Source: Guillardia theta CCMP2712 (lineage: Eukaryota; Protista; Cryptophyta). From it: a stretch of 64,000 bases of DNA. The DNA is taken from contig NW_005434667.1 in NCBI RefSeq assembly GCF_000315625.1, forward strand, positions 797,061 through 861,060, written 5' to 3'. How positions within the stretch are numbered: position 1 is the first letter of the stretch; each line of letters opens with the position of its first letter. Both the position numbers and the translations under genes were made by a program. The notes under the pieces were generated by a model. The model was not told the origin of the DNA, ran no database searches, and saw only the letters and a program-made list of their open reading frames with translations. This document shows, one piece after another, positions 57,875 through 64,000 of the stretch.

Positions 57875-58586
57875 ATGATGATCGTAGTGATGTAACGCGG
57901 GTTGCACCAGATGACAGTCACTGTCCTGTGTCTGATCTGGGTACTGCTGTTCGAGAGGACAGGTGAATCACTCACGGCCGGGCCACGAGAATTTTACTGA
58001 CCTTGCCTCCCTTTCAGAGGACATGCACTTGGGACCCCAGCAGCTGCTCGCTGCTTCCTACCTCGGGCTGGTCACAACAGCCTTGACAAGCTTCCTGCAG
58101 GTGTGGGATCCTGCTGTCCTCCTCCTGACATCCATCCTTCTTTCCTCCTCCTCACATTCAGTACGATCTTGCGCTCACTTGCTGTGATCGCAGACCGTCG
58201 GGCAGAAGAGCATCAGGGCAGAGAGCGCCGCCATCATCTACGCCATGGACCCTGTGAGGCCCTCCTCTGCCCAGCAAGTCTCTGACGTTGTAGCACCTTG
58301 CGCCCATCAGGTCTATGCCGCCTGCTTCAGCTTCTTCCTGCTGGGGGAGTCCATGGGAGCGCAAGGGATCGCAGGAGGCATGCTGCTGTTTGCTGGTGCG
58401 CTACGTAGCCTCCCCTCACCTGTTGCTCCATGCTGTTCTGTTCATGTGGACCTTGCCCTCTCCTTACTGTGCGATCTTGACGGGGTCGAGATGTTATCTC
58501 CCGTGATGCTCTTGTCTTACAGCTGCAGTCCTCAACATCTTCATGGAGGACAAGGACAAGGGAACGAGCAAGCAGTCGACGAGTGA
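56252..58586 (+). CDS. EamA/DMT superfamily transporter with long Ser-rich N-terminal extension (multi-exon)
   Basis: 'ITILWGSQH', 'MMRFALA', 'GIELGLWTFAGYATQSIGLQYTTASRSAFL', 'YLGLVTTALTSFLQTVGQ..I.AE.AAIIYAMDPVYAA.FSF.LLGE'. Confidence 0.88.
57821..57871. repeat. (GAT)n microsatellite in a DMT-gene intron
   Basis: Seen directly. Confidence 0.9.
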
Positions 58587-59398
58587 TGAATAAACATCGT
58601 TTGCTCAAAGTGAAGTTAATAGGTCCCTTGATTGACTGAAAAAGAAGGGCAAACCGGAGCAAACAGAGGGGGAGGATAGAGCCTACAAGTAGGTCATTCT
58701 AACAACGGGTCGGGAGCCAACAGCGCGAGCCAACTGCGGAGTTTACTACCCTATGATACCCACCATGATGGTGTGTTTTTTGTGGCTTTTTTTAGTCCCC
58801 CTAAACTTGTTAGGTTCTACCCCCTCCTCTCCCCTAGGCTACATGATATGTAGGAGGGTGGGTGGCAACACCCAAACTTGTTACGTTCGGCCGTGATCCT
58901 GTGCTACCAACTTCAATGGATCTATCAGGGTCGTGGAGGAGAATGTAGAGGAGTGGATCTAGCAGAGGCGTGGGGGAGAAGCTCGAGGAATGTTGTTAGG
59001 AGAGAAGCGAGATCGAAAGATGATAGAAGAGGTGGGAATCGCAAACAAGTGCGCCCGAAGAATACATTCATGTCATGCTCATGTCCGTTTGAGGTAGAAA
59101 ATGTGATCAGGGTTTCACCATGTGGCAGGCGACTATTTCTTGGACCAAACATTTCGATGCCTAAAAGAGGTGCATTGCAAGAAATGATGTACGGTATGAT
59201 TGCTCATTGGATGCAGACAGATTCGACAACATCGACAGTGAGCTTGGTAGAACTCTCAAGCAAGTAGAGCAGGTAGGGTCTCTTCACGTATGGTGGTGGG
59301 ATCAGTCATCCAAGAGTATCTGGCTTTCTGCTGGCGAACATGGAATCCAGCAAGACGAAGAGTGTCTCGATCTATCTCTGACACAAGCAGCAAAGCTT

Positions 59399-59562
59399 CA
59401 TCAATGTCATGTAAGCGAAGTCGCTTGCCTTGAGAAGAAACAGAAGACGGCCAGCGCTCCAGGTTCTTCCATACACTTGCCATATCCTACGACCATTTGC
59501 TTGCCATTGAAGCCTCACGGGTCAGGAGGAGCAGCCGCAGGCGAGCAGTTACGAGGTGCTAC
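59399..59562. repeat. 164-bp inverted repeat, left copy
   Basis: Reverse complement of 61823-61986; 2 mismatches found by eye. Confidence 0.95.
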
Positions 59563-59859
59563 TGATGTTGGCCGGCATCATGATGTACTGCTGTCGTGTC
59601 CCGCACCCTGAGCAATGGCGGACAATGACGGACAAAGCCAACCACTGGAGGCTGGTCTCCACCAGGATGGCAACCAAGCCTGCGCGAGTCCGGCAGGCGA
59701 TAGTCATGACCAGGAAGTTGATCAGCTCTCTCCATCCAGTTCTACGAACCCCCGGCTGTGGCACAGCCCAACACGTGTGTCTTCGGTGCTGTTTGCTTGA
59801 TGCAAAAGCCTGAGGCAAACGCTGTTCTGAAGGTATGCAAAATATGCAGGTTGTGCTTT

Positions 59860-62800
59860 CACCTTGTTTGTGCATGGGAGTTAGCTGGCTCGGATCGCAA
59901 TGATGAATGTGGAAAGCATGCACCTCGTTCATGCAGAAAGAGGGTGAAAGACAAGAATGCGCTTCTGAGAATATTTGACGACCCTGAGGCTTGTAGCATT
60001 TCGGCTTCAGATGACCCCAACATCCAAGCATTTCTTGATCTGGAATTTAACACGGTGAGCCGAAGCACTCAAGAGACGTATGCTTATCGAATTATGGGTA
60101 TGATCGAGTTCTTCCACAAGGATCCAAGATATCACGCAGCACTCAACACAGATCGCACGAACCTGAAGCTCCCATTGCCATTGGACTTGCTCCAGGCTTT
60201 CTTTGGTTGGCTGTGTGAGCACGACGGAATGAGGACAGCAGGGTCCAAGAGGAAGGCAGCATCGGCAGTAAGTGTGGACGGCTAAGAAGAAGAAGAAAAT
60301 GCAGATACCCCAGACGTGGCAGGTCACGAGCGTCAGGCAGAGGTAGCCAACATTTTGCAAGTGTCAAGCAGAGACAAAGCAACCGTAGCTGTGTCCACCG
60401 TGCAGGGTTACAAAAGTGCGTTGAAATATCTGTACAGACGCAGGAATGTTATGTTATGGCAATCGGGTTGAAAACAGGCGGAAGATCATTGGATGACATT
60501 CTGGATGGTTATATCAATTCCTATACCAAAGAAGTTACCCGGAAGAAGGGCGAAGGTGTGATGCAGGCCCACGAGGGCAAGACAACTCTATCCATGCCAG
60601 AGTATAAAGCACTGAACAACATCTTGAAGGAGCTGAGACCTCGCAGAGGAAGTTCAGAGTCCGGCAGTTCATGGATTTTCTCTTGGGCATGCTGTTCTGT
60701 CATGTGGAACCTGGTATGCAGAAGTGAGAGTCTAGACATTTTGCATCTTGAGCACTTTGACTGAAAAAATGATTGCATGAAGGTGGTCTTACTCAAGACA
60801 AAAAAAGATCAGTGCGGCATTGGTACTGACATGACTGCAGCTGTAAGGCAAGAGCATCACGGGAGATACATCTCGACCCCGATCGACCCAGAGTAAGCAA
60901 CAGCATACTGCAGATCTTCACCATTGCCAAGATCTGTCTAGGATATCTGAATGATCTCTGAACTTTCTTCATTCCAAGGAGGCTGGAAGTACAAAGTGAG
61001 CCTCTGCAGTAGCAAACGGTCCATCTGTTGCTTCGTTGGGTATTTCTGAGCAAGTTCCTGCGCAGCCCTCGAGCTCTCGCCTACATCTTCACTCCCGGAC
61101 TCGGGCAAGTCTGCATTCCCCGCTGAAGAACTCCTTCCAGCCGTCAGCAATCTCTGGGCTGAGGCGAAGGTGGGTGAAAAAGGTGCAGATCGCTTGTTTT
61201 TGTTCGTCGCGGAGCCTTTCCCAACAAGAAAAGGCATCGCCCTCCTCGGCCCTTACAGCATGATCGTCGTTGCCGATCTCCCAGAGGTGTCCATCCTTGA
61301 GTCCAATGAGCCGGTGGAGAAATCGTGGCCGATCAGGCTCAACGCGGACGGAGATGATAAAGGTCTGAGACTGTTCACCCCAAGTAAGCATCTCGACGTG
61401 ATCCAAATTGAATCACCTTGCCAATGTCATGAGAGAGGTCGAGATGGATGTCACCTTGAACTTGTGAAATTTGCAGGAAGAGGGTCATTCCGAGTTGTTG
61501 GTAGCCTGCTGACTTCGTGACGCTCTCGGCATGCTTCTGGAGCTTTCTCTGCCAGGAGCTATGTTACAAGTAAATCGACGGGTTTGGGCAGGAAGGAGGA
61601 GGAGAGCACTTCAAGACGAGGCACGAGCCTCTTGAAGGAACAGCCATGTTTCAAAGTACAACTCTTGCCATGGGAGAGGCGAACGAGGGGAACAGTGCGG
61701 ATCCCCTTCCCTCACAGTCAATCACAAACCTTGAGCTCCTGGTCTACGTGGTCAGAACTCAGTGCCAACTGCAGATGCTGATGTCAGCAGCCAGCGACTC
61801 TATACAAGGAGATAAACACCTCGTAGCACTTCGTAACTGCTCGCCTGCGGCTGCTCCTCCTGACCCGTGAGGCTTCAATGGCAAGCAAATGGTCGTAGGA
61901 TATGGCAAGTGTATGGAAGAACCTGGAGCGCTGGCCGTCTTCTGTTTCTTCTCAAGGCAAGCGACTACGCTTACATGACATTGATGGCTTGAATCAGCTA
62001 CGTGACAAAGTAGTTTTGAAGGTTCACAGTTGCCAAGAGTGTGGCATGCTCGCACATGGGATTCCAACAAAGACCGATATCATTCATACGATTAAGGAGC
62101 TTGTGACGAAAGTATCAAAGGTTGAAGGCATGTTCACAATTGACGTGATGAGAAAAGCTGCAGAGTCTGGAGAGACAATGGCGGCATCGACCAATTCAAT
62201 GGAGTCAGAGATGATAAAGGCGTTAGACATGGTGACACAACAATTGAATGCCCACAACAAAGCACTGAAGAAAACACTGAAGGAGAACTCAAAACAAACA
62301 CAGCAAGGTATGAAAAGAGTTTGGATGAAGCTGCATAACATAGAGGAGAACATGAAAGTTATGTTCGAAATCATGACATCAGTGTTGGATGCAAATAATT
62401 CTGTGCGAGACGGGAGTTCGGTGGAACAGAGGTTTGTATGGCGGGAAGGGACACAAGACAATGAATTGCTTGCGGAAAACAGCTCGGAAGCAAGCTCAGG
62501 ATCAGACATGGAAGAAGATGGGTCATTGAACAGTGGAGCAGACAACGATGATGCCACGCCAGGCGAAGAACAATCATTGAATGATGACGAAGTAGAGGGC
62601 CATTGGTTCGAATGGGGGGGGGGCGCCACATGGTTCCTGCAGATTTCGAATGGCCACAGAAAATATCAGTCAGAAACATGATGACGTATTTGTATCAAGG
62701 ACGGATTAGAAACATTGATGGAAGGGTACAAAGAATCAGACCATTTTGTAACTTTTACAAACTGAATTTGAGGCATGACTTGAAAACGAAACCCAGCAGG

Positions 62801-63145
62801 AGGAATCTTTACAAAGCAAGGTGCGTGATGAATGAGATAGAGAAGATTTGCCGGGAGAACGGAGCGATTGGTGAAGAAGGCGAGATACGGGCAGACAACA
62901 TCCAGGAATGTTACGACAAAGCGTTTCATGTGCTGGTTGAGAGAGCATACGGGAAGTCGGCATGGCAGAGGCGTGAACTCAAGCACAGATATGAACAGCT
63001 GAGTTACATCACGTTTTGCAACAAGTTACACTTGGAGAAGGATAGGACGACAGCTCGACCGGACCACACACAAGACTCGATGGAGTCTTCAGATGAGAGT
63101 AGGGAAAGAACGACATATGCTGCAGCATTGTTGAAAGACTTATGA
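59860..63145 (+). pseudogene. Crypton-type tyrosine recombinase pseudogene with internal replacement of the catalytic core
   Basis: 'TVSRSTQETY...LPLPLDLLQAFFGWL', 'STVQGYKSALKYLY', 'GYINSY.K...K.EG.M...EGK..LS..EY', 'MWNLVCRSES...LHLEHFD*KND.M.V...KTKKDQCG', then 'GMLAHGIP' and 'FEWGG/RHMVPADFEWP...IRPF'. Lesions: TAA 60283, frameshift about 60447, TGA 60762, frameshift in G10 about 62614. Confidence 0.8.
61823..61986. repeat. 164-bp inverted repeat, right copy
   Basis: Reverse complement of 59399-59562. Confidence 0.95.
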
Positions 63146-63204
63146 CAGTGGGATGGGAATGAAGATGAACATATGTTTCACCTACATTATTCTACCTCAT
63201 CCCA

Positions 63205-63380
63205 TCTACCATCACTCCTCTACCATCACTCCTCTGCCATCACTCCTCTACCGTAGTACAGGCCTCTCCTCTGCCATGTCTCCTCTGCCATGTCTCCTCT
63301 GGCAACTCTCCTCTACCGACTCTCCTCTGGCAACTCTCCTCTACCGACTCTCCTCTGGCATGTCTCCTCTGCCATCTCTC
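63205..63380. repeat. Degenerate 14-bp-period tandem array, CTCCTCT core plus variable 7-mers (about 11 units)
   Basis: CTCCTCT followed by accatca, gccatca, gccatgt, ggcaact, accgact, ggcatgt, etc. Confidence 0.88.
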
Positions 63381-64000
63381 CCCCTTGTTGGCATCTTTTC
63401 TCGGACATTTCTCTTCTACGTGTCGTCTTCTTCGTTTCCCCAACACATCTTGTCCGAACTCCCCGCTGTAGTTGCCTTGCCAGCGTATTTACCACGCCGG
63501 AACAAATTTTCGAAACGGAACTGTGACTCAGATGCTACCCGGTTTACAGAGCTTAAAAGGACCGGTGATCAGTTTCCGATACACCTGTCATGCCATGATG
63601 ACTGACCTTGCAAAAGGCGGGCCTGGGATCCCGCCGGGGAGACTCCGGGGATCCGGAGTCCCGTGACTGATTGCTGCCGGGGCACCGGAATTATCTGAGC
63701 CGGGTTCGGCACTGTCCCGGCACTCTGCCACTGATGGTACTGTGACGGAGGCAGTAGTGAAGGCGGCTCAGTTGAAGGTGGCACCCGCCGGCCCGGCCCG
63801 TGTCGGGTGACGGTCCGATCGCTCGCCGCCGGTGCGCGGCCATGCGGGGTGGCACCCGGTGGGGGGGGATCGGACCTGGACGGACGGTGACTGGGCGAAC
63901 GGCGTAACCGTGAACTGAACTTCTCAAGTTGAACTGAGGGGCTCGGTGCCACTACTGCAGCGGCCTGGCGCGAGCCGGCACAGTGCCGTTGGGAGCTGAA

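What the first reader, a model, noticed from the sequence alone, without database searches (positions are those of the whole stretch)
59395..61990. Near-perfect 164-bp inverted repeats bracket the 5' part of a tyrosine recombinase, with a 4-bp GCTT duplication outside
Seen: 59399-59562 and 61823-61986 are reverse complements (about 162/164 identical) enclosing 2.26 kb, and GCTT sits immediately outside both ends (59395-59398, 61987-61990). The repeats are far better preserved than the multiply disabled recombinase, so they look younger. Known: Cryptons lack long terminal inverted repeats, whereas long inverted repeats around a tyrosine recombinase typify invertible systems (FLP/2-micron, shufflons) and DIRS-type ends. 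Inference: three readings are possible: an unusual TIR/TSD element carrying a Crypton half, an invertible cassette acted on in trans, or a chance inverted duplication. Caveats: the recombinase C-terminus continues outside the right repeat, and a 4-bp match can arise by chance.
Basis: partly seen in the sequence, partly recalled or inferred. Interest (0 to 1): 0.82.

Follow-up and report, generated by a model that had tools for sequence, protein, structure and literature searches.

The report
Repair patch inside a dead Crypton
The 164-bp inverted repeat is real, but it is not the end of a jumping gene or a DNA switch: it is a scar left when a broken, dead Crypton-type element in the alga Guillardia theta was patched with an upside-down copy of neighbouring host DNA.

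Summary
Observation confirmed. Arms 59399-59562 and 61823-61986 are 162/164 complementary.

The window is Guillardia theta nuclear DNA. The 164-mer has only three copies in the 87-Mb assembly, all at this locus. The third lies 1.5 kb past the window end.

- **Left arm:** it sits inside 815 bp of continuous host sequence (X, 58776-59590), which is a direct duplicate of 64903-65728. So the left GCTT is not a junction and not a target-site duplication.
- **Right arm:** it is the end of a 1153-bp patch (60834-61986). The patch is an inverted copy of host DNA found 3.5-5 kb downstream (164 bp plus 989 bp, skipping 193 bp).
- **What the patch replaced:** the 757 bp that encode the recombinase catalytic core in three other genomic copies and in a transcript-like contig.
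- **The Crypton fragment:** it also lacks both native ends (about 239 bp at 5', about 76 bp at 3').
- **Ancestral state:** a metagenome contig from a relative shows one copy of the 164-mer, no Crypton and no duplication.

Best reading: a by-product of break repair or local duplication. It is neither mobile nor a switch. Eight private substitutions in the patch argue against misassembly. Interest is low.

Other notes of this scan on the same stretch also saw the replaced core.

The parts
58481..58594 (+). Z: host segment next to the 3' end of the EamA-like gene. It is a roughly 110-bp direct repeat of the tail of V' (ext 66820-66929). Its first 48 bp are the reverse complement of 60834-60881.
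   Evidence: Adjacency to the upstream gene is ancestral, because it is the same in the relative's contig L053.
58595..58775 (+). u: ancestral host spacer. It holds one copy (58627-58688) of a 65-130-bp repeat dispersed over more than 100 sites in the genome.
58776..59590 (+). X: the decaying direct duplicate of host segment X' (ext 64903-65728). Substitutions are 2.5% and patchy. A 5-bp insertion at 59189-93 frameshifts an ORF that is intact (261 aa) in X'. There is a 21-bp deletion and 6-bp insertion scar at 59568-59582.
59399..59562 (+). Left arm (x164), internal to X. It is 100% identical to the parental copy at ext 65522-65685.
59591..60833 (+). Crypton-like element, part a. It begins about 239 bp inside the element as defined by copies C103, C105 and C48. 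It encodes the N-terminal part of the recombinase up to the K motif (KTKKDQ) and carries at least 4 disabling lesions.
60834..61822 (-). Y: inverted copy of host V' (ext 65879-66867). It has 6 differences in 989 bp, all within 60848-61044. It shares an indel state with copy 2, not with Z.
61823..61986 (-). Right arm: inverted copy of x164, joined bluntly to Y. In the source the two pieces are 193 bp apart. It has two private substitutions (61830, 61967).
61987..61988 (.). 2-nt filler (GC) at the junction back into the element. Together with the next TT it makes the right-hand 'GCTT'.
61989..64000 (+). Crypton-like element, part c. It covers the C-terminal region of the recombinase protein, 14-bp tandem repeats at 63177-63400, and a GC-rich tail. 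It runs on to about ext 64866, roughly 76 bp short of the native 3' end.

Best explanation
The inverted repeat is a by-product of local DNA repair or duplication. It is not a functional structure.

Shown:
- The ancestral host order was gene-Z-u-X-s-V.
- In G. theta a terminally truncated fragment of a Crypton-type tyrosine-recombinase element now lies between two direct copies of X (815 bp).
- The fragment's 757-bp catalytic middle has been replaced by a 1153-bp inverted copy of host DNA. That copy comes from just downstream: the last 164 bp of X' plus the first 989 bp of V', without the 193 bp between them.
- The right arm is therefore an inverted copy of the parental 164-mer at ext 65522-65685. 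The left arm is a direct duplicate of the same parent.
- The arms face each other only because both copies landed on either side of the element's 5' piece.

Inferred:
- The patch arose when a break or gap in the dead element was repaired.
- The repair either copied the nearby template by template switching, or captured fragments of it by end joining. The junctions are blunt or carry 2 nt of filler.
- This happened later than the event that placed the element and duplicated X.
- Nothing suggests that the structure moves, inverts or is used.
For: - The 164-mer occurs 3 times in 87 Mb, all within 6.3 kb.
- X and V are unique at DNA and protein level.
- Y is the reverse complement of ext 65879-66867 at 99.4%. 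X matches X' at 96.7%.
- Copies C103 and C48 carry 757 bp between the points that match 60833 and 61989. C105 and the transcript-like contig L054 carry that stretch too. It encodes HSLRKGG...RANW...DRY.
- The window copy lacks 239 bp at the 5' end and 76 bp at the 3' end.
- The relative's contig L053 has gene-Z-u-X-x164-s-V contiguous, with a single x164 and no element.
- At X/X' diagnostic sites L053 agrees with copy 2 at 10 and with copy 1 at 3. It also lacks copy 1's 5-bp insertion.
- The patch has 8 private differences in 1153 bp, so it is a separate, evolving copy.
- There are no N runs between 26381 and ext 84000.
Against: - No reads were available, so the assembly and a single orientation are not verified directly.
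- Divergence is patchy. X/X' shows no differences in 58900-59188 and 59385-59567, and all Y differences fall in the first 211 bp. Gene conversion may therefore have blurred the relative ages and the number of events.
- Blunt junctions do not distinguish fragment capture from template switching.
- The source of the right arm (copy 1 or copy 2) cannot be told from the arm itself, because those two copies are identical.
Confidence: 0.8

Rival explanations
1. One complex replicative event (serial template switching, MMBIR or chromoanasynthesis-like) produced everything at once: the X duplication, the truncated element copied from an ectopic donor, and the inverted patch.
For: All extra host pieces come from one 2-kb template next to the element. 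The product can be read as 5 switches along one path. Both element ends are non-native. Substitutions cluster near junctions (60848, 61830, 61967), as reported for error-prone break-induced synthesis (concept: PMC8421209).
Against: The patch is significantly less diverged from its source than X is from X' (p = 0.0014). Junctions show little or no microhomology.
Confidence: 0.12
2. Assembly artefact: a chimeric join of reads from the parental host copy into the element.
For: The structure is unique, and local repeats invite mis-joins.
Against: There are eight private substitutions in 1153 bp relative to the source, and two between the arms. There are no gaps. Three distinct clean junctions exist, and the element reading frame resumes colinearly after the patch.
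Confidence: 0.04
3. Invertible cassette: the 2.26-kb interval flips by recombination between the arms. This could be homologous recombination, or a Crypton recombinase supplied in trans by an intact copy.
For: A 164-bp near-perfect inverted repeat is a possible substrate for homologous recombination. Other copies of the element are expressed (the L054 contig lacks two short stretches of the C103 copy, as if spliced).
Against: The arms are host sequence with no similarity to the element or its ends. The interval holds only dead element DNA and a host fragment, so flipping would switch nothing. Only one orientation is in the assembly.
Confidence: 0.03
4. A mobile TIR/TSD element or 'Pack-Crypton' that captured host DNA and can transpose.
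For: Host fragments sit inside a transposon-derived sequence. GCTT is on both sides.
Against: There are no further copies. The left arm and left GCTT are inside continuous host DNA. Both native element ends are missing. Cryptons use short direct repeats, not TIRs (PMC3212892).
Confidence: 0.01

Closest known systems
Templated or captured insertions at repaired DNA breaks (filler DNA; MMBIR/FoSTeS-type template switching; PMC8421209 for the concept)
   Same: A deletion at the recipient (757 bp) is replaced by a copy of a nearby template that itself stays intact. The copy is inverted and skips part of the template. Junctions are blunt or carry 2 nt of filler. Substitutions lie near the junctions.
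   Different: The patch is long (1153 bp) and little microhomology is visible. The pathway cannot be assigned from sequence alone.
Crypton DNA transposons (tyrosine-recombinase elements; Goodwin 2003; Kojima and Jurka 2011, PMC3212892)
   Same: The element family here has at least 4 larger copies. It encodes one long protein with the R / K / HxxR / W / Y pattern. It has no reverse transcriptase and no long terminal repeats. Nearest Atlas clusters carry NDC10_II/GCR1_C, DUF3504 and Phage_integrase domains.
   Different: The window copy is a fragment without either native end and without the catalytic core. Family membership rests on motifs and weak or feature-based matches. No Pfam integrase hit passes threshold and no usable fold was obtained.
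Site-specific inversion systems (FLP/2-micron, Hin/Gin, shufflons)
   Same: Inverted repeats flank a segment near a tyrosine-recombinase gene.
   Different: The repeats are copies of an unrelated host sequence. The recombinase is dead. There is no switchable gene or promoter, and no second orientation is seen.
Staggered-break duplications at rearrangement breakpoints (Drosophila inversion model of Ranz et al. 2007; cited from memory)
   Same: Duplicated host segments sit at the borders of inserted or rearranged DNA: the 815-bp direct X/X' pair around the element, and inverted 164-bp and 48-bp pairs.
   Different: The inverted piece matches the downstream copy rather than its neighbour. No simple two-break inversion reproduces the order.

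Membership tests
TIR/TSD cut-and-paste transposon | Inverted repeats lie at the physical ends of the inserted unit | tested here: not met
   The left arm is internal to 815 bp of host homology that continues on both sides of it, both in the paralogue X' and in a relative's contig. Only the outer edge of the right arm is a junction.
TIR/TSD cut-and-paste transposon | Target-site duplication created on insertion | tested here: not met
   The left GCTT is part of the host palindrome AAGCTT within continuous host DNA. The right GCTT is GC filler plus TT of the element.
TIR/TSD cut-and-paste transposon | Several copies with the same ends at different sites | tested here: not met
   There are 3 copies of the 164-mer in 87 Mb, all within 6.3 kb, and no other pair.
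Crypton | Tyrosine recombinase with the catalytic R...K...HxxR...W/H...Y pattern | tested here: inconclusive
   The motifs WNLxxRS, KxKxDQxG, HSxRKG and RAxWxxGxxxDRY are conserved in alignment A3. Pfam gives only sub-threshold Phage_int_SAM_4 hits. PDB searches found nothing. The AlphaFold model was unusable, with pLDDT 37. Atlas feature search points to NDC10_II/GCR1_C, DUF3504 and Phage_integrase clusters. In the window copy the HxxR, W and Y part is deleted.
Crypton | No reverse transcriptase, no TIRs or long direct repeats | tested here: met
   No RT domain was found in the ORFs of copy C103. No long repeats flank that copy.
Crypton | Short (4-6 bp) direct repeats at native termini | tested here: inconclusive
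   The C103 and C105 ends were located but no clear short repeat was seen with two copies. The window copy lacks both termini.
Site-specific invertible switch | Repeats carry the recombinase's recognition sites or relate to its element | tested here: not met
   x164 shares only words of 10 bp or less with the element, which is chance level. It is host sequence conserved in a relative that lacks the element.
Site-specific invertible switch | Both orientations occur | not testable with these tools
   No reads were available. The assembly holds one orientation.
DIRS-like retroelement | RT/RNase H together with the recombinase | tested here: not met
   Pfam scans of the element ORFs found no RT or RNase H domain.
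Pack-type gene capture by a transposon | Captured host DNA inside an element that keeps its ends and has transposed | tested here: not met
   Both native ends are missing. The chimera is unique in the genome.
Templated or captured insertion at a repaired break | Intact nearby source, loss of recipient DNA, junctions with little or no homology | tested here: met
   The source is at ext 65522-65685 and 65879-66867. The element lost 757 bp. The junctions are described.

The most novel reading that the evidence does not exclude
Read-through transcription of the locus would give an RNA with a 164-bp perfect-stem hairpin made of host-gene sequence. The arm lies in a 261-aa ORF that is conserved in a relative. 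The scar could therefore act as a small-RNA source against that host gene. Alternatively, the repeat could drive a recurrent inversion polymorphism. Either would make it a functional accident rather than a neutral scar.
Probability: 0.04. Interest if true: 0.45.

Novelty: already known. Interest (0 to 1): 0.15.

Why it matters
It matters mainly as a correction. A structure that looks like a transposon with long terminal inverted repeats and a 4-bp duplication is an ordinary rearrangement scar. It should not be counted as a new element type or a DNA switch.

There is minor value in three points:
- The locus is a cleanly resolved complex rearrangement in a cryptophyte nuclear genome.
- A contig from a relative preserves the ancestral, element-free state.
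- It documents a Crypton-like family in Guillardia theta. That family has at least four larger copies and an expressed, possibly spliced transcript. The papers I could search do not describe it.

Tried and rejected
- **Spliced host transcript as source of the patch:** I asked whether the skipped 193 bp are an intron. The boundaries are TG..AT on one strand and AT..CA on the other, and the stretch starts inside a conserved ORF. Rejected.
- **Simple two-break inversion with staggered cuts:** rejected. Y carries the indel state of the downstream copy, and 941 bp of Y have no counterpart upstream.
- **Long flanking direct repeats as a family trait:** the C103 copy has none.
- **Independent assemblies of the junctions:** two exact-pattern scans of metagenome contigs found nothing. 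A look-up of the junction-spanning ORF also found nothing.
- **Fold evidence for the recombinase:** the AlphaFold model had pLDDT 37, so no fold search was run. PDB sequence and profile searches were empty. PHROGs gave nothing.
- **Rfam:** scans of the region and of the dispersed short repeat gave nothing meaningful.
- **Retrocopy idea for the truncated element:** contig L054 starts exactly at the truncation point. The idea could not be tested, because the two short gaps of L054 against the C103 copy both fall inside the replaced 757 bp. There is also no poly(A) tract at the 3' junction.

Full report
**Coordinates.** 'ext' numbers continue the window numbering past 64000. The window is G000:C7:797061-861060, and ext 64001-74000 is locus L006.

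**1. The observation**

The repeat finder and a self-BLAST confirm arms 59399-59562 and 61823-61986, 162/164 complementary, 2260 nt apart. The mismatches are at 61830 and 61967. GCTT is present at 59395-98 and 61987-90. No N runs lie between 26381 and ext 84000.

**2. Organism and element**

A 529-aa ORF of a sister copy is 96% identical to GUITHDRAFT_117157 of Guillardia theta CCMP2712 and 39% identical to a Hanusia phi protein. The assembly has 87 Mb in 669 contigs.

The element occurs as larger copies on C103, C105, C48 and here, plus fragments.

- Copy C103 spans about C103:176730-182322.
- Its protein shows the motifs WNLxCRSE, KTKKDQ, HSLRKGG, RANW and DRY. These are conserved in distant homologues.
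- Pfam gives only sub-threshold SAM-like integrase hits.
- PDB searches and the AlphaFold model failed.
- An Atlas feature search lands on NDC10_II/GCR1_C, DUF3504 and Phage_integrase clusters, the domains associated with Cryptons.

I call it Crypton-like. Cryptons have neither TIRs nor long direct repeats, only 4-6-bp direct repeats (PMC3212892).

**3. What lies between and around the arms**

The 164-mer has three copies in the genome. The third is at ext 65522-65685, in direct orientation and 100% identical to the left arm. A self-comparison of the extended locus gives these relations:

| Segment | Coordinates | Matches | Orientation and identity |
|---|---|---|---|
| X | 58776-59567 | X', ext 64903-65690 | direct, 96.7% |
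| Y | 60834-61822 | V', ext 65879-66867 | reverse complement, 99.4% |
| Z | 58481-58586 | ext 66820-66924 | direct, 96% |

With gaps allowed, X/X' homology runs on to 59590 and ext 65728.

The element matches its sister copies over 59593-60833 and again from 61989 onward. C103 and C48 both have 757 bp between those two points. C105 and the transcript-like contig L054 carry that stretch too. It encodes the HxxR, W and Y residues.

So 60834-61986 (1153 bp) replaces the catalytic core. It is an inverted copy of x164' plus the first 989 bp of V', without the 193 bp that separate them in the source.

**4. Junctions**

- 60833|60834 is blunt.
- 61822|61823 is blunt.
- At 61986 the host-derived ...CATTGATG is followed by GC and then by element sequence TTGAATCAGC.
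- The right 'GCTT' is therefore filler plus element bases.
- The left GCTT belongs to the host palindrome AAGCTT, which is continuous in X, in X' and, with a 3-bp gap, in a relative. There is no target-site duplication.
- The skipped 193 bp have no splice-site boundaries, and they begin inside a conserved ORF. A cDNA origin is therefore unlikely.

**5. The element fragment has no native ends**

- Copies C103, C105 and C48 share a further 180-239 bp upstream of the point where the window copy starts.
- C103 and C105 share about 76 bp beyond the point where the window copy stops, near ext 64866.
- The arm sequence has no similarity to the element.

**6. The ancestral state**

The 261-aa ORF across X' and s has a 77%-identical homologue on a 1591-bp metagenome contig, L053. 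That contig aligns to four stretches in order:

1. 57992-58563, the upstream gene end plus Z.
2. u, weakly.
3. X, with a single x164.
4. s and the start of V.

These stretches are contiguous, with no element and no second X.

At the sites where X and X' differ, the relative agrees with X' at 10 substitutions and with X at 3. It also lacks the 5-bp insertion of X. So X' keeps the ancestral sequence and ORF, and X is the decaying duplicate.

**7. History and mechanism**

Shown:
- An extra 6.1 kb is present: the element fragment plus a second X.
- A 757-bp loss has been replaced by an inverted local copy.
- The patch carries private substitutions.

Inferred:
- First, a terminally truncated piece of the element was captured at a break, and 815 bp of host DNA was duplicated around it.
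- Later, a break or gap in the element was repaired using the downstream host region as template or as a source of fragments.
- The two-step order rests on divergence: 8 differences in 1153 bp against 20 in 792 bp (p = 0.0014).
- Patchy divergence weakens this. X/X' has no differences in 58900-59188 and 59385-59567, and all six Y differences lie in its first 211 bp. That points to gene conversion or error-prone synthesis. A single complex template-switching event therefore remains a rival explanation.

**8. Other rivals**

- **Misassembly** is unlikely, because the patch differs from its source at 8 sites.
- **A DNA switch** is unsupported, and I could not test it for lack of reads.
- **A mobile TIR or 'Pack-Crypton' element** is refuted by the copy count and the junction anatomy.

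**9. Verdict**

The repeat is real, but it is an ordinary rearrangement scar. Other notes of this scan on this stretch had also seen the replaced core. A follow-up on another piece of this genome likewise found that inverted repeats around a Crypton copy were not the family's ends; I did not test that one.

Noticed in passing
window 58627-58688 (also L045-L052): A 65-130-bp sequence is dispersed over more than 100 sites of the genome at 91-100% identity. It has no Rfam match. It is absent from the corresponding spot in the relative's contig, so it looks like a small mobile insertion.
   Followed up: partly
window 59440-59562; L006:1560-1900; L053:1260-1591: The core of the 164-mer, the following 193 bp and the start of V are about 98-100% identical to the relative's contig. 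Neighbouring DNA is only 53-92% identical. The conserved block runs past the stop of the 261-aa ORF, so something beyond that ORF may be constrained.
   Followed up: partly
L054 (JGI 3300017164 contig) against window 59593: A transcript-like contig of another element copy begins exactly where the window copy is truncated at its 5' end. It lacks two short stretches (28 and 50 bp) of the C103 copy, as if spliced. The start could be a transcription start or an assembly-graph branch point caused by this locus being transcribed.
   Followed up: no
window 63177-63400; C103:180123-180928: A 14-bp tandem repeat sits inside the element and reads as PLPSLLYHHSSTIT-like peptide repeats in all three frames. 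It is much expanded in the C103 copy.
   Followed up: no
window 58481-58594 and L006:2820-2929: Direct repeats of about 110 bp (96% identical) flank the whole ancestral host unit u-X-s-V. The origin is unknown, and the unit is single-copy.
   Followed up: no
L006:526-2612 (gene model GUITHDRAFT_133411, P0008): The deposited 308-aa gene model stitches together an ORF from the element's GC-rich tail, bits of X' and an ORF in V'. It is probably a chimeric ab initio prediction.
   Followed up: no
L006:5864-7693 and onward (ext 69864+): An AT-rich 609-aa ORF with no Pfam hit marks the start of a virus-like island. Several further inverted repeats occur at ext 71888-83180. Other notes of the scan describe an inversion there.
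   Followed up: no
C105:242947-249022: The C105 element copy carries an insertion of about 5.3 kb inside the recombinase gene, and several kb more before its 3' tail.
   Followed up: no
window 59568-59582: Next to the host/element junction, copy X has a 21-bp deletion and a 6-bp insertion. The insertion creates the 8-bp palindrome ATCATGAT, a small scar of the kind left by snap-back synthesis during end joining.
   Followed up: no
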